Part shown: positions 1-63,181 of the stretch, piece after piece
Position numbering within the stretch: position 1 is the stretch's first letter
Layout: every line of letters begins with the position of its first letter
Sequence record: phage_1
Strand: one strand, 5' to 3'
DNA: 64,000 nucleotides
Program-made: the position numbers and the translations under genes
The notes under the pieces: model-generated
Told to the model about the DNA's origin: nothing
Databases searched by the model: none
The model's input: the letters and a program-made list of their open reading frames with translations, nothing else

Positions 1-76
1 GCCGTTTAAGCCCAGCCCGTATTACACGATGGGACAACTGCGCGCTTCCTTCAAAGGGAAAGCACGCTAAAGTGTG

Positions 77-103
77 GGGGACTTCGGTCCCCTTTCTTTT
101 TTT
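77..103 (+). terminator. Rho-independent terminator
   Basis: GGGGAC-TTCG-GTCCCC followed by T tract. Confidence 0.8.
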
Positions 104-43793: not shown

Positions 43794-44002
43794 TGAATCT
43801 ACGTTGGCCGATCGTGGCTGCTGTGTTGTTTTGTATTTATATCGCCATCAGCACCAGTACCCGCACTGCAGAACGTCGCGAGACCGCAACCAGTACGTTC
43901 AGAATGTGCATTGACCGCGTAGACCCGAACAGTACCACTTATCCTGACGCGGTGAATGCGTGCCGTAAAGCAGTTGCTGAGATATTGAAAGAGGAAAATT
44001 AA
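43793..44002 (+). CDS. Small single-pass membrane protein
   Basis: WPIVAAVLFCIYIAIS TM helix; Cys pair in C-terminal part. Confidence 0.65.
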   Translation: MNLRWPIVAAVLFCIYIAISTSTRTAERRETATSTFRMCIDRVDPNSTTYPDAVNACRKAVAEILKEEN

Positions 44003-44229
44003 TGGAAAACCTCACGCCGGTTGAGATAGTGGCGCTATTCGATCGTTACGTATATGGACAAACGCAGGCAAAGAAAATGNTGGCGATTGCGCTACGTAAT
44101 CGATACCGTGCCAATAAACTTAACGTAGTGGACCGTATGTCGGTCCACAAACAGAACCTTTTAATAGAAGGTCCAACAGGCACGGGTAANNCNNAGTTGA
44201 TGCGTGAAGAAAAACAGAAACAAAAGTGA
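44002..44229 (+). pseudogene. hslU: Truncated HslU (ClpY) ATPase, N-terminal 75 aa only
   Basis: LTPVEIVALFDRYVYGQTQAKKMxAIALRNRYR...KQNLLIEGPTGTG matches the HslU N-terminus; stops just after Walker A. Confidence 0.8.
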
Positions 44230-44237
44230 GGTAAAGG

Positions 44238-45245
44238 ATGACGAAGCTCGTTTCGTTTTCAGCAGGGTTGGATTCCACCTGGATAATGTATCAGCTGCTA
44301 TGCAAAGCACCGGCCAATGAAGCACGACATGTCCGTCCTGCGTATTTCTCCATGTGGAATGGAGGTAACGCGAACTTCATGGAAATTCTTTGTAGCGTGG
44401 CCATTGTTGAACGGTTGATGGATAGACACCATGCACAAACCGATCATGTTACATGGGCGGTGCTCGGGGAAGAGAACTTCCCGCCTGTCGTTACCGCTGG
44501 ATATGCTAACGGCTGGTCGCCTCTGGTTCAGCAGGGCAATGTTGTTAATGGTCTCGCTAAACTGATGTGTGGTATTACGCGCAAACAGCACCACGCCTAT
44601 GCAGTTGTTGGTTGGAATAAGCTAGATGCGTTGGAGAATAGTCTAGAGCTGGGAGATTGGACATTAGACGAGTACGCTCGCTTAAAGAACCTCTATAGCG
44701 AATTGATGTATTTCCAAGATCATGCCGGTCGCGTTCCACCGCTTCTAACACCTGCGTGGGATAAAGAGAAACTGGAAATGTGGCAGGAGTTGCCGGAAGA
44801 TGTTCGTAGGTTGGTACAGGTCAGTAACTACAACAACTACGAATTCGCGATAGACCGTGGGAATAACGTGCTCATCGTTTATGCCAATCCGTCAGCAAAG
44901 TCGCAGAATTATCGTAGTCTTGGTATTACACCGTCAGTGGGATGGGAGATTAAAATCAACGATGCTTACAGACGGGTATGGTGTTCTGCTCTTGGTAGTG
45001 CTATTTCTGCTATGGGTTTGGGCGTACCGGCTTTTGCTAACTTTAAGGACCCGGAAAGAAACCACACGNCCTTTACGGTAAGNGAAGATACTGACCGGTT
45101 ATGCATCACATCGTTTACCGCGGAAGAGTGGTGCGAGTATGCGCCACATTTTAAAGCGCTTCAGGAGAAAGAAAAAGAGANAGNNAAAAATGCCAAAGCA
45201 AGTAAAGCTGNGGACGCCCCAACTGGCGAAGNGGCGGATAGCTGA
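44238..45245 (+). CDS. QueC-like PP-loop ATP pyrophosphatase
   Basis: LVSFSAGLDST; LLTPAWDKEKLE resembles QueC 'TP...K.E'; no C-terminal Zn cysteines. Confidence 0.6.
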   Translation: MTKLVSFSAGLDSTWIMYQLLCKAPANEARHVRPAYFSMWNGGNANFMEILCSVAIVERLMDRHHAQTDHVTWAVLGEENFPPVVTAGYANGWSPLVQQGNVVNGLAKLMCGITRKQHHAYAVVGWNKLDALENSLELGDWTLDEYARLKNLYSELMYFQDHAGRVPPLLTPAWDKEKLEMWQELPEDVRRLVQVSNYNNYEFAIDRGNNVLIVYANPSAKSQNYRSLGITPSVGWEIKINDAYRRVWCSALGSAISAMGLGVPAFANFKDPERNHTXFTVXEDTDRLCITSFTAEEWCEYAPHFKALQEKEKEXXKNAKASKAXDAPTGEXADS

Positions 45246-45980: not shown

Positions 45981-45994
45981 CACCGTACGAGTAG

Positions 45995-46032
45995 GCTACC
46001 ACACGATCATATGTGTGGTAGCTTATTTTTTT
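45995..46032 (+). terminator. Rho-independent terminator
   Basis: GCTACCACAC/GTGTGGTAGC stem plus T tract. Confidence 0.7.
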
Positions 46033-46048
46033 GTTTCTGGAGGCGTTA

Positions 46049-46588
46049 ATGGCAGACCGCTATCAGCCCGACCTAACACTCTCGTCGAAAGCGCTTGTCG
46101 TGGCGCTTATCAATCATGACAATAATCTGTCACTTACTGATAAAGAGATTGTGATTAGGGATATTGATGCGAACGCTTCACCAGACATCATCCCGAAGAA
46201 CACACAGGCAAGCGTGGCCAAAGCACGTAAGCCAAATGGGAAAACCGTGACAGTCTATTATGACCGGTTAAGTGCGTCTACCGTGCTAGACAGTTTTCAG
46301 CCGCTATTGGTGTCCTTAGACGGAACCGAAACGGACATTCAGCAAATTGCCAGTGTGATTAACGGTTACTGCGGTACAAACTTGTCAGCAGCAGACTTAC
46401 AGTCTGCGCCAATCGTGGTCAGCGACGATTTTACCCTGGTGAATATCACTGGCGATTCCCCAGCATGGCTTGGGACATTTATCGCAACCCTGTTTACCAA
46501 AAATGAGTACGTTCTTTCAACTGACACTGACACGGTGCTGTGTCTGGATGAGAACACTGTGCTCGTACTGACTGACGAGGAAGAGTAA
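46049..46588 (+). CDS. Tail-fibre/baseplate paralog family protein (adaptor-like)
   Basis: LVVALIN, VYYDRL, CGTNLSAADL, AWLGTF signatures; start revised to ATG 46049. Confidence 0.65.
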   Translation: MADRYQPDLTLSSKALVVALINHDNNLSLTDKEIVIRDIDANASPDIIPKNTQASVAKARKPNGKTVTVYYDRLSASTVLDSFQPLLVSLDGTETDIQQIASVINGYCGTNLSAADLQSAPIVVSDDFTLVNITGDSPAWLGTFIATLFTKNEYVLSTDTDTVLCLDENTVLVLTDEEE

Positions 46589-47073
46589 TGGCCAGCCCAG
46601 TTAAAAAGCAAACATTTGAGAGCTTACCATTTTATACCGATATCACCAACGTGAAAGATGGGATGTTCTTGTTTATCAAAGATGGGAAAGCGTATCAGTA
46701 CCCGCTCGAGATGTTGGGTGTCCAGAAGGTTGCTCAGGGTGTCGTTATTCGTGATGCGGCGTATGAGTTGGAAGCGGCAGCAGCCACTGATTGGTACCTA
46801 GGACTGTCGCAACCGGAAACCGATCTCACTATTAAACCTGATGGAGTATTGGGGGCATTTCGGTACACGCTCAACCTGACTATTCTTCAGGGAACGGGAG
46901 CCAACAAAATTAACTGGCCTTCCAACGTGAAGTTCCCCCATGATGCATACCCGGTGCTGTCGTACCAGAAAGGGAAATCGGACATGATTACCCTGACTAC
47001 AATCGACGGCGGTTACACCTGGAAAGGTGGCGTTAGTGGAACAGGATATACAGAATGGGTAGAAACTCCTTAA
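46588..47073 (+). CDS. Tail-fibre-associated protein
   Basis: LTILQGTGANKINWPSNVKF...PVLSYQKGKSDMITLTTIDGGYTW resembles a beta-rich domain found at phage fibre C-termini. Confidence 0.55.
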   Translation: MASPVKKQTFESLPFYTDITNVKDGMFLFIKDGKAYQYPLEMLGVQKVAQGVVIRDAAYELEAAAATDWYLGLSQPETDLTIKPDGVLGAFRYTLNLTILQGTGANKINWPSNVKFPHDAYPVLSYQKGKSDMITLTTIDGGYTWKGGVSGTGYTEWVETP

Positions 47074-50072
47074 TCGCAGTACGGACAGGGATTAACTACG
47101 CACTGTCGCTGGCTTACGGACATCAGGACTTTGTTCGTCGAAACACCGGCTTAACTAACGACGCCCACAATGACCATTATCTGATTAACCCAGAAGGGGT
47201 GCTATCTAATAACCGGCATTTCATTGCTGACTCCATGGCAGTGTATCAACCTAATGGTGACGCCACCACAGAAGGTCAATCGTTGCTGATTATTGGCTAC
47301 TGTCACATGTACATTGCTACCAAAAACCAGATGTGGTTAGATGCGGCGATTCATGCATGGGAAGCGTACGCTACCTACTATTACGCAGGTCAGGCCATTC
47401 CCGATTCACCACAACGTTGGATTTGTAACTGGCTAGTTAACGGTAAAGAGCCAGTGCTGGCAGACTATCCGGTGCATCCGACCGAGCCAACCCACGGTGG
47501 TTATAAGTGTGTACCGGTAACGTTTACGAACGGGCGTTGCCAGATACCCCAAGGCGCACCATTCTTTGGTGAATATCTGAACAATTTCTTTTCTGCGCAT
47601 CGTGGCCATCCTACTTGGGGTGCGGTTAATGCCGACGTACAGAAAATTAAGGAATCGGAAGACGGGTTAATTGACTGGTCTAAAGTCCCTGATTACTTAA
47701 TCGTCAATCCAGAGAAACCTTACGATGTAAAAGCGTGGGTGGACTGGAACACGATGCTAAACGACCCAACCGGATATACACCAATATGGGGCGGTTCTAC
47801 CTCGAAAGGTCCGCGGTACGAACCTGACTGGTTTGTTGTGTGGACGGGTGAGAAGGTTCAAGACGGCGATGTCATCGAATCCGGTTTACCTGATGCCCAG
47901 AAAGGAACCGTACAATTAAAGGACACTAGTATTAACGGTGTGTATTTGATTAACTACGCTTCCCAGGTACCTGTAGAGCACGGCGGATATTTGTTTGACC
48001 GCAATGAGCCGTGGCACAACCGTCCGGTTCATACCCCGTTAAAAGGGTCTGTTAACCAGATGGGTAACGCGGCAGATGCGGAAGTGTGGTTTATTGATGC
48101 CTGTTATCTGCTCTGGCGTATCACAGGTGAACCGCGCTATAAAGCCGCATTAGACTCCGTGTTCTATACAGCGCACGAGTACACGTATATCGATGCGAAG
48201 GACAAGTTTTTCCGTCGTTCTAAGCTAGCCGAAACACCATTTACAGATGGTATCTCGTACGACTATAAATACCCCAGCACCGTTGAGGTCGCTTACAGTC
48301 GTGATGAAAATGGTGATATTGTGTTCCGTTCTGAGGAAGCTGTGCAGAACTTTATGGAACAGCAAGCCGTGCGTTTCAGGATAAACAGTCAATCGAAGTT
48401 ACGTGTGACATATGGCGGTGTTTGTGACAACGGTGATGCACTTGCGTGTAAAGTGATGGTGGATATTAACCCCGTCAAAGCGGATACTGAAGAAGTAAAC
48501 TGGTACGGCTGTACGCTCCCGGGATCAACATCGATGGAAGTAGAACAGCATGACATCGATTTAGGGCATCTGGCCAGAATGACCAATCCGGCCAACGGCG
48601 AAGATTACATCATTGCCGATGCGCGAGCATGTTCGGACTACGGTGGGTGTACGTGGCAGGAGAAGTTTGAGAACAACATTTACGATGGTCGTTCAGGGAC
48701 AATCGTAGAAGCGTTATTCCCGAACGACGATGCGGGTTTCATTATCGGTTTCTGGTTAACCGATGCCGGTGTTGCACCCCCACAGTCAATTGTCTATCGT
48801 GCCGATGCTGATTTCAACTTCCGTTTCGAAGATACCGACAAGTGGCGTTGGTGGTGGATGTTGCCCGCGACTAACGGGGAATGGAAACAGGTTATTATTC
48901 GCCCTGAAGACGCAACACTCTCGGGCTATCAACCTGACCACGATACCGACGTCGAACCAAAACCGGCTGCGCCAAACTATACAACTATCGATCAGGTAAC
49001 CATACTGCCCGATTCGGCTGTGGAGAATGCGCACTTTAGCTGGTATTGCGTAAACGATGTTCCGCCCCTGTTTAATGCAGACGACGGTTGGACGTTAACG
49101 TTCCGTATTGTAATTCGGGGAGGTTCTGCATTTACGGGTAAGGTGGGCGATTGTACGATAAAAGATTACCGTCTTGACTCGCTCGCGTATTGTCCAGGTA
49201 CGATACCGTTCTCGAACATTTATTCGGAAGGAACGTATCAGCTAGGTGCATGGCACGGGATGCCGTATCCCGGCTATCAGTATCCGTTTATGTACACCAT
49301 ACACACCGATGATCGCTACAAAGACTGGCTCTTAAATCAGATTCGGTTTATGCACGATTCACAAACCAACTACCAAACGCAGATAGGTGAGTTAGGTCCA
49401 GGTTGTGCGGCGTATATTTGGAACCGTTGGGATAACTACTCTTACGGCCCGGCAGATACGTGGACAACGTTCCATTGGGGCGATGGACATCCGTGGGCAG
49501 GTTATCAGCCGCGCGCGTATAACGCCGCTGCGCGTTGTTGGTACGAATTAGTTGTGCGTGGTAAAGAGGTTCCACCTGAGCTAGTAGTGTACGTTGAAAA
49601 TTGGGCTAAGTGGCTCGTAGGGTTCTTAGACCGCTTTGACAACCACACCCCGAATGAATTCCCTACGGCACCAAATAAACCGGTATGGGTAGAGAATGAT
49701 TTCACAGCACATATGTGTGCGCTCTGGATAGCAGGCAGTGCTTATGCGGCAATGGCCGGCTGTACAGTGGAAGGGTTGAGCCGTATTATGGATATGGGGA
49801 TGAAGGAGATGGGTGACAACTTCACCGTCACCGACATTCCAGGAAAAGCCATTAACGGTGCCTGGTCTCCATGGGCAAATCCCACCACGGATAACGGTCA
49901 GGCTTTTGGGTTTTATACTGGAGAAGCGATGCGTGCAATCGGGTTGTATCTCCTCTATAAAGAACACGGCGCAGGACATGATATTTATCGTGACTTGGCA
50001 ATCCCCGACCACACAACAGCCTCGCTCGATATAACGTTTACTATCCCAGACGATCCGCTCGAAACTAATTAA
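47055..50072 (+). CDS. Large tail-associated protein with GH8 (BcsZ-like) glycoside hydrolase motifs and carbohydrate-binding-like inserts
   Basis: TTEGQS (E73) and NAADAEVW...LWRITGEPRY (D341) parallel BcsZ TTSEGQSY and NSASDGDVW...GRLWKEQRY; Trp-rich beta-sandwich-like middle. Confidence 0.65.
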   Translation: MGRNSLIAVRTGINYALSLAYGHQDFVRRNTGLTNDAHNDHYLINPEGVLSNNRHFIADSMAVYQPNGDATTEGQSLLIIGYCHMYIATKNQMWLDAAIHAWEAYATYYYAGQAIPDSPQRWICNWLVNGKEPVLADYPVHPTEPTHGGYKCVPVTFTNGRCQIPQGAPFFGEYLNNFFSAHRGHPTWGAVNADVQKIKESEDGLIDWSKVPDYLIVNPEKPYDVKAWVDWNTMLNDPTGYTPIWGGSTSKGPRYEPDWFVVWTGEKVQDGDVIESGLPDAQKGTVQLKDTSINGVYLINYASQVPVEHGGYLFDRNEPWHNRPVHTPLKGSVNQMGNAADAEVWFIDACYLLWRITGEPRYKAALDSVFYTAHEYTYIDAKDKFFRRSKLAETPFTDGISYDYKYPSTVEVAYSRDENGDIVFRSEEAVQNFMEQQAVRFRINSQSKLRVTYGGVCDNGDALACKVMVDINPVKADTEEVNWYGCTLPGSTSMEVEQHDIDLGHLARMTNPANGEDYIIADARACSDYGGCTWQEKFENNIYDGRSGTIVEALFPNDDAGFIIGFWLTDAGVAPPQSIVYRADADFNFRFEDTDKWRWWWMLPATNGEWKQVIIRPEDATLSGYQPDHDTDVEPKPAAPNYTTIDQVTILPDSAVENAHFSWYCVNDVPPLFNADDGWTLTFRIVIRGGSAFTGKVGDCTIKDYRLDSLAYCPGTIPFSNIYSEGTYQLGAWHGMPYPGYQYPFMYTIHTDDRYKDWLLNQIRFMHDSQTNYQTQIGELGPGCAAYIWNRWDNYSYGPADTWTTFHWGDGHPWAGYQPRAYNAAARCWYELVVRGKEVPPELVVYVENWAKWLVGFLDRFDNHTPNEFPTAPNKPVWVENDFTAHMCALWIAGSAYAAMAGCTVEGLSRIMDMGMKEMGDNFTVTDIPGKAINGAWSPWANPTTDNGQAFGFYTGEAMRAIGLYLLYKEHGAGHDIYRDLAIPDHTTASLDITFTIPDDPLETN

Positions 50073-50077
50073 GTGTA

Positions 50078-50120
50078 TACCAGCTATCCTTCGGGGTGGC
50101 TGGTACGCTTTATTTTATTT
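50078..50120 (+). terminator. Rho-independent terminator
   Basis: TACCAGCTATCC-TTCG-GGGTGGCTGGTA plus T-rich tail. Confidence 0.75.
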
Positions 50121-57304: not shown

Positions 57305-58150
57305 ATGCCACTTTTAGCCACTGCTGAAAAGATTATTATCGCGGAGGTTAACGTCGAAAACAATCTCGATTTAAAAGTCGAAGATGTGGTTTTCGGTGTC
57401 CCTGCGATTCCGACGTCTGACGAAGACCTGGCAAAAGCCAATGGTCATAACGCGATGGTGCGCATTCAGGCATTGGCCACCGCTAATGCTATCGGTGCCA
57501 CTACCGTGTATTACGATCGTGTTGACTTCGCAGACATGTTTACCGACCCAGACGGGATTCAACCTTTACGTGTTCCTGCACGTCTCGATGCTGTTTACCA
57601 GATGCATGACGTGGTCGGGTTAATTAACCAGTATTACGGTCTCAGTCTTAAACCTGCAGATGTGGTGAATACCGAAATCGACAGGAAGACATGGCGTGTG
57701 GATCTGATTGCCACGCCCACTTCTTTAGGTTGGATAGGGCAACAACAGGTACAGCTGTTACCAGGCGATGCGTTGCTTCCTGCAAACTTCGAACCCTTAA
57801 CAGTAACACCTTACGAGTATCCGTATTTTAACATCAAGGTCGGTCAAGGTGCAGTTTATTCGTATCCCTGGCGCTTTGATAATTTCGCGGAGGAATTTCA
57901 ACGACTAGGTGCTGCGATAACCGCAGAACGTCTGGCACAGATTCTCAAAACGGTCACCGGTGATAACTGGACAACGTACCGTAACCCAATCGACTTTAAC
58001 CTTCGTGAAGCCGTCGTCGTCTATAACGGGCGTAACAAAGCGGAATTACCAACCAACCCAGCAGTCGACAACGTGCTGATTGTGGAGCTGTCGTTGTACT
58101 GTCTGAATTTTGGCGGGCGTTTGTATTTGCACTACAACGACCCTGATTAA
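57305..58150 (+). CDS. Tail-fibre/baseplate paralog family protein
   Basis: VYYDRV, YGLSLKPADV, LGWIG, YSYPW, GRLYLHYN. Confidence 0.7.
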   Translation: MPLLATAEKIIIAEVNVENNLDLKVEDVVFGVPAIPTSDEDLAKANGHNAMVRIQALATANAIGATTVYYDRVDFADMFTDPDGIQPLRVPARLDAVYQMHDVVGLINQYYGLSLKPADVVNTEIDRKTWRVDLIATPTSLGWIGQQQVQLLPGDALLPANFEPLTVTPYEYPYFNIKVGQGAVYSYPWRFDNFAEEFQRLGAAITAERLAQILKTVTGDNWTTYRNPIDFNLREAVVVYNGRNKAELPTNPAVDNVLIVELSLYCLNFGGRLYLHYNDPD

Positions 58151-60890: not shown

Positions 60891-61721
60891 TTGATGATCA
60901 ACTATGCTAAGCCGTCAAACGAGTTGGTCTTTGACCTCATTAACCGGGATAACCCAAACCTACCTATTAAAGCGTCGCCGGCAAACTGCTACGTGGAGAA
61001 AGTGACGCAGGTTCCCGTTAATGCAGCTTCCAACAACCGCAATACGTCGGCACGCTTGCGCGGTATTCAGGGTTCCGGATTTCGAGACGCAATCACCGTT
61101 TACTACGACCGTGTGAACTTAGCGCGGTTATTGCCGTGGGGTCCTTCTGTCCAGGCGCAGTTCGTCACGTTTGACGCGCCCAACCTCCACTCAGCCTTTT
61201 CGGTGCTCTTGGATACTTACGGAGTAAACTTCTCCGCAATCGATATCCAAAACTACTCACTGTTTGGTGCCAATACCCCAAATTACACCAATACACAGAC
61301 CATTGCAGCGCTATCGACATCTCCGGCTTATATCGGTTCTGCGACGTTGCGTTATAACCGTGGTTTACCGGTACTAGACACTTCGGTGAAATCAGATGTC
61401 TTGAATGCGATTCAAGAGCCTATTTCACCGTCTCTCGGTAAGAAGTGTATTGATTTGTTGACGTACGGTATTGACTTTACCGCGTATAAAAACCTACTGA
61501 CAGTAGATGCTTCTGGCCTACCGCAGTGGGCTGGTTTGCGTAAGGTGTTGGATGACCTGGGTATTCCGAACTACGCGGGGCCACTGAACAGTAACACCGT
61601 TCAGGATGTGCCGACTTCCACCGCTCAGTTCGCTAACAAATCGTACGACCGCGTGGTTATCCAAACGGGCATCGATGAGGAAGGCGTGAAAGGCGTGGCG
61701 TACTACCACTATAACAGCTAA
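60891..61721 (+). CDS. Tail-fibre/baseplate paralog family protein
   Basis: VFDLIN, VYYDRVNL, LTYGIDFT, GVAYYHYN. Confidence 0.7.
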   Translation: MMINYAKPSNELVFDLINRDNPNLPIKASPANCYVEKVTQVPVNAASNNRNTSARLRGIQGSGFRDAITVYYDRVNLARLLPWGPSVQAQFVTFDAPNLHSAFSVLLDTYGVNFSAIDIQNYSLFGANTPNYTNTQTIAALSTSPAYIGSATLRYNRGLPVLDTSVKSDVLNAIQEPISPSLGKKCIDLLTYGIDFTAYKNLLTVDASGLPQWAGLRKVLDDLGIPNYAGPLNSNTVQDVPTSTAQFANKSYDRVVIQTGIDEEGVKGVAYYHYNS

Positions 61722-61768: not shown

Positions 61769-63181
61769 ATGCTATTTTACTCGAAGGAGTCGGCACTGCT
61801 TGTATACGACCAAGTCAATCGGGATAATCCTGATTTAGTTGTTAAGCTGACGCCGGCTATCGCTGCTTTAACCAGCGGCCCAACTTCAGTTACGTTAAAC
61901 CAGCGTAACACCAAAGCTGTTTTCACCGGGTATCCAGGGACAGGTGTACAAGGTAATGTTACCGTGTACTACGACCGGATTAACCTGGCCACTTTATTTA
62001 ATTTTGTGCCGACTGTGGCTATCAAAGATACAGTCTTAACGGTACGAGACGCGCTACCTGCAATAAACGACGCATTGGGGCTTACATTAGTTGCTTCTGA
62101 TTTGCAGTCACCTGACGCAAGTTTACCTAAACCGAGCGCTTCGCCGCAGACGTTGAAATTAAATATCTCAGGTAATTGCCCTGCGTTTACAGGCAGCTTA
62201 ACGATACGTTATACCGTCCCGAGTGGTGCAATTTACCCCGATTCTGGACCTGGCCCTAAAACGTTGCTGCAAGGTAACACTATCGCGGGTTATTTCGGAA
62301 CAACCACAATTGCAGAGTTGTTTACACACTCTCAACTTCTTAATGCCACTATATCGGCCGGTGCGTTACCACCGGTACATTCTGGTGCCGAAGGTTGGTA
62401 CAAGTTCTTTTACCAGGGTAGGGTTATTTACCTCCCGATTAGTCCTGTCGCTAGCTCCATCTCCTGGAATACGTTATATACAAACGGACTCGTTTACGGA
62501 ACAGACGATAATGGTAAATACCCTGCGGCGACGCCCGTTAACCAGGGACGCATCATTAGCTTTACAGGCGCAGACAACAAAAGGTTTTACTTCCGCGTTC
62601 GTCTACCTAGTGCCGGGAAAGACCCATACGTCAGCGGCACCCCAACTGCCGCTGAGTTAGCAGGTAGTGAGTTTGAGATGTTCAACTTTCTGTATAATGG
62701 AACGTGGGACAAACCGATTAACAGTTACTGGACGCTGTTCTGTTTATTGAAAGATACACTGAACACCAACGTCGCCAATCATCGCATGGCGACGTTGTCT
62801 GGAGCCAGTTGGACAAACTTAGGAAAATCATCGAGCGCAGGCAACTACTACTGGTTCCCGGTGCTAGAGTTGGTGGATAAGTCCACAGTTACCTTGGGTT
62901 TAGAAGATATCCATGGTGCGGTAGATTACAGTCTCCAACCGNNCAGNGTGTCCGCAGAAAANNCNTTTAGNCTCANNCCNTTGGTNCTCGGTAATCCAGA
63001 TACTACCGATTTCGAACCGGTAGTTGTTACTTCAGAAAACAGTTTCGCACNGCATCCGCCTGCTTTAATGCTGCCGAAGACAGTCGACTTCCAACCCATT
63101 GCGGCTACCGCTGAAATGTATACGCCACCCGACAAGACATCGTTAACGTCACTTAACGGTGAACTGGACGGCTTTAAGTAG
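61769..63181 (+). CDS. Virion protein: fibre-family N-domain fused to a second structural domain
   Basis: VYYDRINL, LGLTLVASDL at N-terminus; GPKTLLQGNTIAGYFG and LYTNGLVYGTDDNG shared with next gene. Confidence 0.65.
   Translation: MLFYSKESALLVYDQVNRDNPDLVVKLTPAIAALTSGPTSVTLNQRNTKAVFTGYPGTGVQGNVTVYYDRINLATLFNFVPTVAIKDTVLTVRDALPAINDALGLTLVASDLQSPDASLPKPSASPQTLKLNISGNCPAFTGSLTIRYTVPSGAIYPDSGPGPKTLLQGNTIAGYFGTTTIAELFTHSQLLNATISAGALPPVHSGAEGWYKFFYQGRVIYLPISPVASSISWNTLYTNGLVYGTDDNGKYPAATPVNQGRIISFTGADNKRFYFRVRLPSAGKDPYVSGTPTAAELAGSEFEMFNFLYNGTWDKPINSYWTLFCLLKDTLNTNVANHRMATLSGASWTNLGKSSSAGNYYWFPVLELVDKSTVTLGLEDIHGAVDYSLQPXXVSAEXXFXLXXLXLGNPDTTDFEPVVVTSENSFAXHPPALMLPKTVDFQPIAATAEMYTPPDKTSLTSLNGELDGFK

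What the first reader, a model, noticed from the sequence alone, without database searches (positions are those of the whole stretch)
46049..50072. Three-gene tail appendage ending in a 1005-aa GH8/BcsZ-like glycanase: candidate virion-borne cellulose-degrading module
An insulated operon (terminators at 45995 and 50078) encodes a fibre-family adaptor, a fibre-tip-like protein overlapping the next gene, and a large Trp/Tyr-rich protein. The large protein has both GH8 signature segments in order: ATTEGQSLL (Glu73, codon 47271) and GNAADAEVW...LWRITGEPRY (Asp341, codon 48075). These parallel, as I recall them, E. coli BcsZ ITTSEGQSYG and NSASDGDVW...GRLWKEQRY. Long inserts, including a CBM-like WRWWWMLPATNGEWKQVIIRPED segment, split the barrel. 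Established: BcsZ is the endo-beta-1,4-glucanase for enterobacterial cellulose, and Salmonella/E. coli biofilms contain (pEtN-)cellulose. Inference: the virion carries an enzyme that digests or binds biofilm cellulose or a related glucan, unlike the usual beta-helix depolymerases, mounted through a swappable adaptor.
Basis: partly seen in the sequence, partly recalled or inferred. Interest (0 to 1): 0.78.

Follow-up and report, generated by a model that had tools for sequence, protein, structure and literature searches.

The report
Phage tail glycosidase-like barrel protein module
A jumbo E. coli phage carries a large tail protein built on an (alpha/alpha)6 sugar-cleaving enzyme fold and a small partner protein; the pair occurs in hundreds of phages (phi92 gp140/gp141 type), and neither enzyme activity nor a cellulose target is shown.

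Summary
The window is Escherichia phage vB_EcoM_Lh1B, an SPN3US-like jumbo phage. Three co-oriented genes lie between two terminator-like hairpins. The 1005-aa protein is Trp/Tyr-rich and has the quoted motifs at the stated codons.

- A high-confidence AlphaFold model shows an (alpha/alpha)6-type helical barrel split by two large beta-rich inserts.
- A natural insert-less relative matches six-hairpin enzymes: GH126, GH76, GH48, sugar epimerases and GH8, including BcsZ at rank 17.
- E73 and D341 are conserved in 97-99% of more than 200 relatives.
- The best local profile matches to real BcsZ are its TSEGQS and ASDGDVW motifs.
- No Pfam, PDB-sequence or hhalign test reaches significance, so GH8 membership and a cellulose substrate remain unproven.

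Published SPN3US proteomics already place gp124 and gp123 in the tail. The first gene is not fibre-family: it is a short paralogue of a head-protein family and was scored non-virion.

The true conserved unit is gene 2 plus the big gene. They abut in 67 of 80 viral loci. This is the phi92 gp140/gp141 pair, and gp141 is listed in a review as a glycosidase. In this clade genes 1-2 were exchanged as a cassette.

Verdict: a new member of a known but uncharacterised family.

The parts
45989..46028 (+). Terminator-like hairpin upstream of the cluster (17-bp stem, T-run)
   Evidence: sequence read
46049..46588 (+). Gene 1, 179 aa, equivalent to SPN3US gp122. A short member (N-terminal half only) of DUF7941 / SPN3US paralogue family B, whose other members are head proteins. 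Found only in Seoulvirus-like loci. Role in this module is unknown.
   Evidence: Pfam DUF7941 E 2e-18, profile positions 3-151 of 276. phrog_2935 and phrog_1037 'virion structural protein'. Paralogues in the window at 57305-58150, 60891-61721 and 61769-63181. PMC5694885 proposes gp122 as a family B member. SPN3US MS gave 7-8 PSM and the label 'Non-virion'. Present in 4 of 80 viral loci.
46159..47093 (+). Mosaic cassette covering most of gene 1, all of gene 2 and the first 13 codons of gene 3. It is not alignable by blastn to SPN3US, while flanking DNA is 87-97% identical.
   Evidence: Against SPN3US: g1 49%, g2 41%, big protein 96.9% aa identity. Against an Asesino-like contig (L011) all three are 77-80%.
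46588..47073 (+). Gene 2, 161 aa, equivalent to SPN3US gp123 and phi92 gp140. Small tail protein and the conserved partner, probably the adaptor, of the large protein.
   Evidence: phrog_9017 'tail fiber protein' E 8e-32. SPFM4 annotation 'Phi92_gp140'. SPN3US MS label 'Tail'. A homologue abuts the big gene in 67 of 80 viral loci, and in L005, L008 and L090.
46804..47049 (+). Conserved C-terminal domain of gene 2 (residues about 73-154). This is the part shared with partners of the big protein in unrelated phages.
   Evidence: 33-41% identity over this stretch to L005, L008 and L090 proteins. The domain ends a median of 6 residues from the C-terminus in 67 loci.
47055..50072 (+). Gene 3, 1005 aa, equivalent to SPN3US gp124 and the phi92 gp141 family. 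Tail protein with a split (alpha/alpha)6 six-hairpin barrel and two beta-rich inserts.
   Evidence: phrog_2871 'tail protein'. AF2 pLDDT 89.5, pTM 0.85. SPN3US MS label 'Tail'. 540 phage records hold a homologue.
47055..47384 (+). Barrel segment N (residues 1-110; helices 3-29, 72-89, 92-109). It holds E73 (codon 47271-47273) in TTEGQS.
47385..48059 (+). Insert 1 (residues 111-335), a mostly beta domain absent from minimal relatives P0201 and P0251
48060..48203 (+). Barrel segment M (residues 336-383; helices 340-357, 360-382). It holds D341 (codon 48075-48077), E343 and W345.
48204..49283 (+). Insert 2 (residues 384-743), made of beta-sandwich domains. Weak fold matches to CBM22, SGBP-B and jelly-roll proteins.
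48606..49070 (+). Shuffled beta-sandwich module (residues 518-672) carrying the Trp-rich strand WRWWWML. Also found in other phage tail fibres.
   Evidence: phrog_23426 E 4e-45. Erwinia phage MM7 tail fibre, 38% identity over 222 columns. W599 kept in 214 of 233 members and D593 in 229 of 233.
49284..49979 (+). Barrel segment C (residues 744-975; helices 756-777, 817-834, 841-860, 885-901, 908-921, 952-971) with near-invariant Q770, D793, W814, R820, H886 and E957
50078..50105 (+). Terminator-like hairpin downstream (12-bp stem)

Best explanation
The core is a two-gene tail-appendage module of the phi92 gp140/gp141 type, carried here by an SPN3US-like jumbo phage.

The 1005-aa protein is a baseplate-periphery tail protein. 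Its scaffold is an (alpha/alpha)6 six-hairpin barrel of the kind used by inverting glycoside hydrolases. Two large beta-sandwich insertions probably serve as glycan-binding or docking surfaces. It most likely binds, and probably cleaves, a glycan that is conserved on the surface or in the matrix of many Gammaproteobacteria, using E73 as the proton donor and D341 in the -1 subsite.

The 161-aa protein is its dedicated partner. Its conserved C-terminal domain would hold the enzyme, and its variable N-terminal part would plug into whatever baseplate the phage has.

Gene 1 is a Seoulvirus-specific addition from a head-protein paralogue family, with an unknown and perhaps non-structural role.

Shown: gene order, fold class, residue conservation, synteny, tail location of the SPN3US orthologues, and cassette exchange of genes 1-2. 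Inferred: catalysis, roles of the residues, the adaptor mechanism, baseplate position in Seoulviruses, and the substrate.
For: - Fold. The AF2 model is high-confidence (pLDDT 89.5) with eleven long helices and two beta inserts.
- Fold. The insert-less relative P0201 (family profile E 5e-51; AF2 pLDDT 85.9) hits only (alpha/alpha)6 enzymes at probability 1.00: GH126 3ren (TM 0.74-0.77), GH76, GH48, cellobiose 2-epimerase and GH8, including BcsZ 3qxf_A.
- Fold. The full-length model also hits GH116, GH78 and GH48 locally.
- Active site. E73 is kept in 231/238, Q75 in 228/238, D341 in 212/215 and W345 in 210/215.
- Active site. Further near-invariant polar residues (R820, H886, E957) lie, like E73 and D341, within the first few residues of barrel helices.
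- Active site. The top local profile matches to BcsZ fall on its TSEGQS and ASDGDVW motifs, and both lie on one collinear path.
- Virion location. SPN3US gp124 gave 159-186 PSM in whole virions against 3-9 in tailless particles. gp123 gave 16-23 against 0. Both are labelled 'Tail'.
- Module. A gene-2 homologue abuts the big gene in 67 of 80 viral loci. Of the rest, 4 lack upstream DNA. In the other 9 the big protein is 1097 aa, the length of homologues carrying an N-terminal P2 gpI baseplate domain.
- Position. In a Pseudomonas P2/HP1-like prophage the pair follows Baseplate_J and Tail_P2_I and precedes a tail fibre. In a phi92-like phage it follows the baseplate hub and spike and precedes gp142/gp143-type fibres.
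- Conserved target. The big protein is 40-60% identical over its full length across phages of Escherichia, Salmonella, Erwinia, Pseudomonas and Vibrio. It stays 96.9% identical between Lh1B and SPN3US while genes 1-2 are swapped.
- Literature. phi92 Gp141 is listed as 'Glycosidase'. Conserved glycan-hydrolysing fibre parts are proposed to target conserved glycans.
Against: - No activity has been measured for any family member that I could find.
- No significant sequence link to any CAZy-type family: Pfam none, NCBIfam none, PDB sequences none, hhalign probability below 5%.
- The same fold is used by non-hydrolytic epimerases and lyases.
- No general-base residue could be assigned.
- I could not inspect model coordinates, so the E73-D341 geometry is unverified.
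- The relative used as a fold proxy (P0201) has Gln at the E73 column in alignment A3. Some members may therefore be non-catalytic binders.
- The adaptor role of gene 2 rests on synteny and fusion logic only.
- Monomeric barrel enzymes are unusual as fibre subunits, and the oligomeric state is unknown.
Confidence: 0.6

Rival explanations
1. The large protein is a GH8/BcsZ-type endo-beta-1,4-glucanase that digests or binds (pEtN-)cellulose of enterobacterial biofilms.
For: - BcsZ and other GH8 structures are among the probability-1.00 fold matches of the family barrel.
- The two best local profile matches to real BcsZ are its TSEGQS (53-58) and ASDGDVW (114-120) motifs, collinear with E73 and D341.
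- GH126, GH48 and GH8, which to my knowledge share a similar inverting catalytic apparatus, all appear among the top hits.
Against: - There is no GH8 profile hit and hhalign is not significant.
- GH8 ranks below GH126, GH76, GH48 and the epimerases.
- No counterpart of the GH8 general base was found.
- Thirty records with homologues name E. coli K-12 MG1655 as host. Its bcsQ is a pseudogene, so cellulose cannot be a required receptor there.
- The family also occurs in phages of hosts where cellulose is not known to be a surface feature.
- Nothing in the sequence speaks to substrate.
Confidence: 0.12
2. The barrel is a catalytically silent, lectin-like receptor-binding module. The protein is a tail fibre that only binds a conserved glycan such as ECA or LPS core, and the acidic residues serve binding.
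For: - Some relatives have lost the Glu. P0201 has Gln at that column, and 7 of 238 members differ.
- Annotators usually call it a tail fibre.
- Vequintavirinae and phi92-like phages that carry it depend on ECA for infection.
- The beta-sandwich inserts look like binding modules.
Against: - Conservation of 97-99% for a Glu/Asp pair at helix N-termini, together with Q75, W345, R820, H886 and E957, is the pattern of an active site rather than of a binding face.
- ECA is absent from Pseudomonas, Vibrio and Alteromonas hosts, whose phages also have the family.
Confidence: 0.18
3. The (alpha/alpha)6 scaffold carries a different chemistry, either polysaccharide lyase or sugar epimerase/isomerase-like, rather than hydrolysis.
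For: - Cellobiose 2-epimerases, N-acylglucosamine 2-epimerase, GH105 and PL2 lyases are among the fold hits.
- A distant relative gives a sub-threshold Pfam hit to the glucuronyl C5-epimerase C-terminus.
Against: - The conserved residues found here are a Glu and an Asp matching GH8 motif positions. To my knowledge the epimerases rely on His residues for catalysis and PL2 on a bound metal, and no such signature was recognised.
- An epimerase has no obvious use on a virion.
Confidence: 0.07
4. It is a purely structural baseplate or fibre protein. The enzyme-like fold is a relic with no glycan function.
For: No activity is known. The protein is highly conserved, as structural proteins often are.
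Against: - Conservation is concentrated on polar and aromatic residues typical of sugar sites.
- The protein is modular, with fusion to different tail platforms.
- It sits among fibres and spikes.
Confidence: 0.03

Closest known systems
phi92 gp140/gp141 pair (Justusliebigvirus) and its orthologues in Phapecoctavirus, Seunavirus, Vequintavirinae, Rosemountvirus, Asteriusvirus and SPN3US gp123/gp124
   Same: - The same two adjacent genes. The BME3 157-aa protein is 33% identical to gene 2, and its 958-aa protein is 41.7% identical over 96% of gene 3.
- Both are tail-located.
- gp141 is listed as a glycosidase tail fibre.
   Different: - Here the pair sits alone between terminators, far from the rest of the tail genes and among non-virion genes.
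- It is preceded by a head-paralogue-family gene.
- In phi92-like phages it lies inside the baseplate/fibre locus.
- No member has a solved structure or a measured activity.
E. coli BcsZ and other GH8 endoglucanases
   Same: - (alpha/alpha)6 barrel: 3qxf_A at probability 1.00, TM 0.61 to the family's minimal member.
- T-[ST]-E-G-Q-S and A-[AS]-D-x-[DE]-x-W motifs in the same order.
   Different: - No significant sequence relationship.
- About 590 residues of inserted beta domains.
- No identified general base.
- Virion-borne rather than periplasmic.
- Substrate unknown.
GH126 (CPF_2247 of Clostridium perfringens, 3ren) and GH48 cellobiohydrolases
   Same: - 3ren is the best structural match of the barrel (TM 0.74-0.77, E 2.6e-7).
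- GH48 entries (4el8, 1l1y, 4fus) match both the minimal relative and the full-length model.
   Different: 8-11% identity to the minimal relative and 17% for 4fus_A against the full-length model. No residue-level check of catalytic positions was possible. The domain context is different.
Classical phage depolymerase tailspikes (right-handed beta-helix trimers such as P22 or phi92 colanidase/endosialidase types)
   Same: Virion-borne, at the baseplate periphery, and predicted to act on host surface glycans.
   Different: - A helical barrel fold instead of a beta-helix.
- Very conserved across hosts instead of hypervariable.
- It needs a separate small partner protein.
- The variable part of this locus is the partner cassette, not the enzyme.

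Membership tests
Glycoside hydrolase family 8 (BcsZ type) | Significant match to the family sequence profile (Pfam PF01270, or a profile of BcsZ relatives) | tested here: not met
   No Pfam hit at E<=1. None in six distant relatives at E<=5. hhalign A1 vs BcsZ family A2: probability 0.7%. Barrel-only match states: probability 0.4%. BLASTP E 0.48.
Glycoside hydrolase family 8 (BcsZ type) | (alpha/alpha)6 barrel fold | tested here: met
   AF2 models. Foldseek of the insert-less relative: 3qxf_A, 7f81_A, 5cd2 and 6trh_C all at probability 1.00 with TM 0.52-0.62. The fold is shared with many other families, so this does not discriminate.
Glycoside hydrolase family 8 (BcsZ type) | Catalytic acid Glu in the T-S-E-G-Q-S motif at the start of a barrel helix | tested here: met
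   TTEGQS 71-76 is the best local match of the N piece to BcsZ 53-58 (E 0.009). E73 is the second residue of helix 72-89. E73 is kept in 231 of 238 members. Spatial equivalence was not checked.
Glycoside hydrolase family 8 (BcsZ type) | Conserved Asp of the A-S-D-x-D-x-W signature, two helices after the Glu | tested here: inconclusive
   AADAEVW 339-345 is the best local match of the middle piece to BcsZ 114-120, but E is only 0.21. D341 is kept in 212 of 215 members and lies at the start of helix 340-357, two helices after E73.
Glycoside hydrolase family 8 (BcsZ type) | General base (Asp243 in BcsZ, from my knowledge of the published structure) in an equivalent position | tested here: inconclusive
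   No alignment reached the C-terminal half of BcsZ with any confidence. Candidates D793 and E957 are conserved but were not mapped in 3D.
Glycoside hydrolase family 8 (BcsZ type) | Beta-1,4-glucanase activity | not testable with these tools
   No activity data for any family member was found in the papers searched.
phi92 gp141-like tail fibre family (phrog_2871) | Full-length sequence homology | tested here: met
   phrog_2871 at 1503 bits. 41.7% identity over 96% to the gp141-position protein of phi92-like BME3. 259 and 375 relatives in the two protein searches.
phi92 gp141-like tail fibre family (phrog_2871) | Preceded by a gp140-like small protein | tested here: met
phi92 gp141-like tail fibre family (phrog_2871) | Component of the tail in purified virions | tested here: met
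   Published proteomics of the 96.9%-identical SPN3US orthologue. Not measured for Lh1B itself.
SPN3US paralogue family B / DUF7941 (gene 1) | Profile match and paralogy to the head-protein gene array | tested here: met
   DUF7941 E 2e-18, covering only the N-terminal half of the profile. phmmer hits to three window ORFs at 57-63 kb. PMC5694885.

The most novel reading that the evidence does not exclude
The phi92 gp141 / SPN3US gp124 family is a new, CAZy-unclassified family of virion-borne inverting glycoside hydrolases related to GH8, GH48 and GH126. It is docked to very different baseplates by a dedicated small adaptor. It is aimed at a glycan shared by many Gammaproteobacteria, possibly cellulose or another beta-1,4-linked polymer. 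That would make it a conserved, host-independent matrix-clearing tool, distinct from the hypervariable beta-helix depolymerases.
Probability: 0.3. Interest if true: 0.65.

Novelty: new member of a known kind. Interest (0 to 1): 0.45.

Why it matters
The protein belongs to one of the most widespread uncharacterised tail-protein families of Gram-negative phages. It is present in 540 GenBank phage records, including jumbo phages, phi92-, rV5- and phAPEC8-like broad-host-range phages, and P2-like prophages.

If it is a real enzyme with a conserved target, three things would follow. It would explain why this part of the 'Swiss army knife' adsorption apparatus does not vary with the host. It would define a second structural class of virion glycanases. 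It would also give a stable, host-independent glycan-recognition module.

The present evidence fixes the fold class, nominates testable residues (E73, D341, R820, H886, E957), and identifies gene 2 rather than gene 1 as the likely docking partner. It does not show activity or substrate.

Tried and rejected
- Sequence searches of the 1005-aa protein and of a 62-sequence family profile against PDB sequences found nothing at E<=10.
- Pfam and NCBIfam gave nothing for genes 2 and 3. Pfam gave nothing for six distant or short relatives.
- Fold search with the full-length model gave only low-TM global matches, because the barrel is split. This was solved by modelling a natural insert-less relative instead of cutting the protein.
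- An exhaustive profile search of 1.84 billion representatives found only 375 relatives. The 150 that the tool listed, all at E<=1e-36, showed no bridge to a named glycosidase family, and the weaker 225 were not listed.
- Long relatives showed fusions to tail domains (Phage-tail_3, Phage_min_tail, a non-contractile tail sheath protein, Big_5). They gave only sub-threshold hints to six-hairpin Pfam families GH76 and C5-epimerase.
- hhalign against BcsZ alone and against a 19-member BcsZ alignment was not significant. The BcsZ alignment is shallow (at least 58% identity), which limits sensitivity.
- No GH48 or GH126 sequence could be obtained by permitted routes, so those profiles were not compared.
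- PDB sequence searches for genes 1 and 2 found nothing.
- Literature searches for Lh1B, SPN3US gp124 and 'six-hairpin' with phage tail fibre found nothing. The phi92 paper (PMC3457257) is not held.
- I rejected the idea that gene 1 is the adaptor. It is absent from 76 of 80 loci that have the pair.
- I rejected ECA as the sole target, because the family also occurs in phages of hosts outside the Enterobacterales.

Full report
**Identity of the window.** Window 46000-50100 is 100% identical to Escherichia phage vB_EcoM_Lh1B (OK428535.1, positions 108000-112100). This is a 240-kb member of the genus Seoulvirus, the SPN3US-like jumbo phages. The three genes correspond to SPN3US_0122, 0123 and 0124. 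No masked bases lie in the region.

**The observation.**
- The protein is Trp/Tyr-rich: W 3.8%, Y 6.0%.
- Strong hairpins followed by T-runs flank the cluster at 45989-46028 and 50078-50105.
- The neighbouring genes on both sides belong to PHROGs of unknown function. Their SPN3US counterparts are absent from the virion proteome list in Table S4 of PMC5105663.
- The cluster is therefore a small island of tail genes away from the main tail modules.

**Virion location is already published for the orthologues.**
- In SPN3US, gp124 (113.7 kDa) gave 64-79 spectra in complete particles and none in tailless heads of a gp64 amber mutant (PMC5105663 Table S4).
- In a later study gp124 gave 159-186 PSM in wild-type virions against 3-9 in tailless particles, and gp123 gave 16-23 against 0. 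Both are labelled 'Tail'.
- gp122 gave 7-8 PSM and is labelled 'Non-virion' (PMC10052503 Table S2).

**Fold of the large protein.**
- There is no hit in Pfam, NCBIfam or PDB sequences, even with a 62-sequence profile.
- An AlphaFold2 model built on that alignment is confident (mean pLDDT 89.5, pTM 0.85).
- It has eleven long helices: 3-29, 72-89, 92-109, 340-357, 360-382, 756-777, 817-834, 841-860, 885-901, 908-921 and 952-971.
- These are interrupted by two beta-rich regions, about 111-335 and 384-743.
- Fold search with the whole model gave only poor global superpositions. The local hits with high probability were (alpha/alpha)6 enzymes: GH116, a GH78 rhamnosidase, and the GH48 of Hahella chejuensis (probability 1.00, 17% identity over 337 columns).
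- To see the barrel without cutting the protein, I used a natural relative that lacks both inserts. P0201 is 512 aa, matches the family profile at E 5e-51, and has the same order of helices.
- Its model (pLDDT 85.9) matches only six-hairpin barrels, all at probability 1.00:
  - GH126 CPF_2247 (3ren, TM 0.74-0.77, E 2.6e-7);
  - GH76 mannanases;
  - GH48 cellobiohydrolases;
  - cellobiose 2-epimerases;
  - BcsZ itself (3qxf_A, rank 17, E 6.4e-6, TM 0.61) and three other GH8 entries.
The family or clan is not resolved by fold alone.

**The GH8 motifs.**
- I fetched the real E. coli K-12 bcsZ from NC_000913, an accession that papers found contain. I built a 19-member BcsZ alignment from it.
- Whole-profile hhalign is not significant: probability 0.7%.
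- Its single best local match is nevertheless window 70-77 against BcsZ 52-59.
- I then compared the pieces of the family alignment separately:
  - The N-terminal barrel piece gives TTEGQS 71-76 against BcsZ TSEGQS 53-58 (E 0.009).
  - The middle barrel piece gives AADAEVWFI 339-347 against BcsZ ASDGDVWMA 114-122 (E 0.21).
  - The two inserts and the C-terminal piece give nothing meaningful.
- With match states restricted to the insert-less relative, one collinear alignment path runs through both motifs. It is still not significant.
- D341 therefore corresponds to BcsZ D116 of the signature. It does not correspond to D243, which I recall from the published BcsZ structure as the general base. 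No equivalent of that base was found.
- In an alignment of 215-243 family members the shares are:

| Residue | Members keeping it |
|---|---|
| E73 | 231/238 |
| Q75 | 228/238 |
| D341 | 212/215 |
| W345 | 210/215 |
| Q770 | 238/239 |
| W814 | 234/240 |
| R820 | 234/240 |
| E957 | 226/241 |
| D793 | 222/241 |
| H886 | 210/243 |

- E73 and D341 are each the second residue of a barrel helix. R820, H886 and E957 also lie within the first few residues of barrel helices. To my knowledge that is where six-hairpin enzymes place their active sites. This last step is inference, because I could not inspect coordinates.
- Taken together this is good circumstantial evidence for a glycosidase-type active site with a GH8-like acid motif. 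It is not evidence of GH8 membership.

**The real module is gene 2 plus gene 3.**
- The big protein has 259 relatives in one search and 375 in an exhaustive one. Many are 40-60% identical over the full length, in phages and prophages of Salmonella, Pseudomonas, Shewanella, Acinetobacter and marine Gammaproteobacteria.
- 540 GenBank phage records encode it. They include Erwinia phiEa104-like phages, Rosemountvirus, 121Q-like giants, Phapecoctavirus, phi92-like, PVP-SE1-like and rV5-like phages and Vibrio phages.
- In 80 viral contigs carrying it, a homologue of gene 2 ends within -18 to +63 nt of the start of the big-gene match in 67.
- Of the other 13, four have no upstream sequence. In the nine others the big protein is 1097 aa, the length of homologues that carry an N-terminal P2 gpI baseplate-wedge domain (PF09684).
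- The shared part of gene 2 is its C-terminal roughly 80 residues. The N-terminal part varies from about 30 to more than 400 residues.
- In a Pseudomonas fluorescens P2/HP1-like prophage the order is Baseplate_J, Tail_P2_I, gene-2-like, big protein, tail fibre, fibre chaperone.
- In phi92-like phage BME3 the order is baseplate hub, spike, one ORF, a 157-aa gene-2-like protein, a 958-aa homologue, then further fibres and a spike. That is phi92 gp140, gp141, gp142, gp143.
- The simplest reading is that gene 2's product is the adaptor. Its conserved end holds the large protein and its variable end fits the local baseplate. Where the adaptor is missing, the large protein is fused to a baseplate protein directly. 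This is inferred from synteny and fusion, not shown.

**Gene 1.**
- Gene 1 matches DUF7941 over the N-terminal half of the profile only.
- It has three paralogues further along the window.
- It occurs in only the four Seoulvirus-like loci of the 80.
- SPN3US workers had proposed gp122 as an extra member of their 'paralogue family B', whose other 20 members are head proteins (PMC5694885).
- Calling it a 'fibre-family adaptor' is not supported.

**Mosaicism.**
- Against SPN3US, DNA identity is 96.8% across the big gene, but window 46159-47093 cannot be aligned by blastn.
- The proteins are 49% (gene 1, with an identical N-terminal 25 residues) and 41% (gene 2) identical.
- Against an Asesino-like contig all three proteins are evenly 77-80% identical.
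- So within the SPN3US/Lh1B clade the gene 1-2 segment was replaced as a cassette while the enzyme-like protein was kept.
- Lh1B and EC001 (E. coli hosts) and JN03 (a Salmonella host) share this allele. A link to host is therefore possible but not clean.

**What it probably does.**
- The protein is exposed on the tail and built on a glycosidase scaffold. It carries beta-sandwich modules that are shuffled among tail fibres: phrog_23426, and the Erwinia MM7 fibre at 38% identity. It is far more conserved than ordinary depolymerases.
- I think it most likely recognises, and probably cuts, a glycan common to many Gammaproteobacteria.
- This agrees with the view, drawn from phi92- and rV5-like phages, that the conserved glycan-hydrolysing parts of their fibre loci target conserved glycans (PMC8594841). 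It also agrees with the listing of phi92 Gp141 as a 'Glycosidase' (PMC5380687; PMC10844046).
- Cellulose is one candidate among several, and nothing here singles it out. Thirty records with homologues name E. coli K-12 MG1655 as host, and its bcsQ is annotated as a pseudogene. To my knowledge this makes K-12 cellulose-negative, so cellulose cannot be an obligatory receptor.

**Novelty.** The family, its tail location and a 'glycosidase' label are in the literature. What this analysis adds is:
- the explicit six-hairpin fold with two inserts;
- family-wide conservation of a GH8-like Glu/Asp pair;
- the gene 2 adaptor logic, with the gpI fusion as its counterpart;
- the cassette exchange in Seoulviruses.

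I rate it a new member of a known, uncharacterised kind, of moderate interest.

**Limits.**
- I could not read model coordinates, so catalytic geometry is untested.
- The BcsZ profile is shallow.
- GH48 and GH126 profiles were not available.
- The original phi92 paper was not held.

Early in my reasoning, before fetching BcsZ, I recalled a few short GH8 motif fragments from memory. Every comparison reported here uses the BcsZ sequence fetched and its relatives. Consensus lines printed by the alignment tools were not used.

Noticed in passing
window 46159-47093: Cassette exchange. Most of gene 1 and all of gene 2 are 41-49% identical in protein to SPN3US, while the adjacent big gene is 96.9% identical. 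The allele is shared by Lh1B, EC001 and JN03, and is closer (77-79%) to an Erwinia-phage-like (Asesino-type) contig.
   Followed up: partly
window 57305-58150, 60891-61721, 61769-63181: Paralogues of gene 1 (phmmer E 1e-7 to 4e-5). They presumably belong to the SPN3US 'paralogue family B' array of head proteins.
   Followed up: partly
window 44002-44229: A 75-aa ORF matches only the first 70 positions of a 552-position PHROG (phrog_4339). It has an N-terminal ATPase-like look and a partly masked P-loop region. It may be a truncated or split gene. SPN3US RefSeq annotates a 'head maturation protease' about 340 nt upstream of the gp119 gene, the counterpart of the next window ORF (44238-45245).
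   Followed up: no
whole window: 257 N in 219 very short runs are scattered through the window and appear as X in several translations. None lies in 46000-50100. They were left untouched.
   Followed up: no
L031 3473-6766 (and L033-L035, L037-L041): In this group of viral contigs, mostly about 18-20 kb, the big protein is 1097 aa and there is no gene-2-like ORF upstream. That is the length of homologues with an N-terminal P2 gpI baseplate domain.
   Followed up: partly
L008 (Pseudomonas fluorescens contig CABVIS010000002.1): The pair sits in a P2/HP1-like tail cluster that has a lysis cassette between the tube and tape-measure genes. It could be a prophage or a tailocin-like element.
   Followed up: no
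proteins P0143, P0207, P0184 (distant relatives): The enzyme-like module is fused to very different tail platforms. These are a non-contractile tail sheath protein with a TIM barrel, a Phage-tail_3 (host-specificity J-like) domain, and a minor tail protein domain.
   Followed up: no
search hits H45, H74, H78: Records named 'Campylobacter phage' A110a, A116 and A135 carry homologues at the same identity as the E. coli phi92-like and rV5-like phages listed beside them. The organism labels may be unreliable.
   Followed up: no
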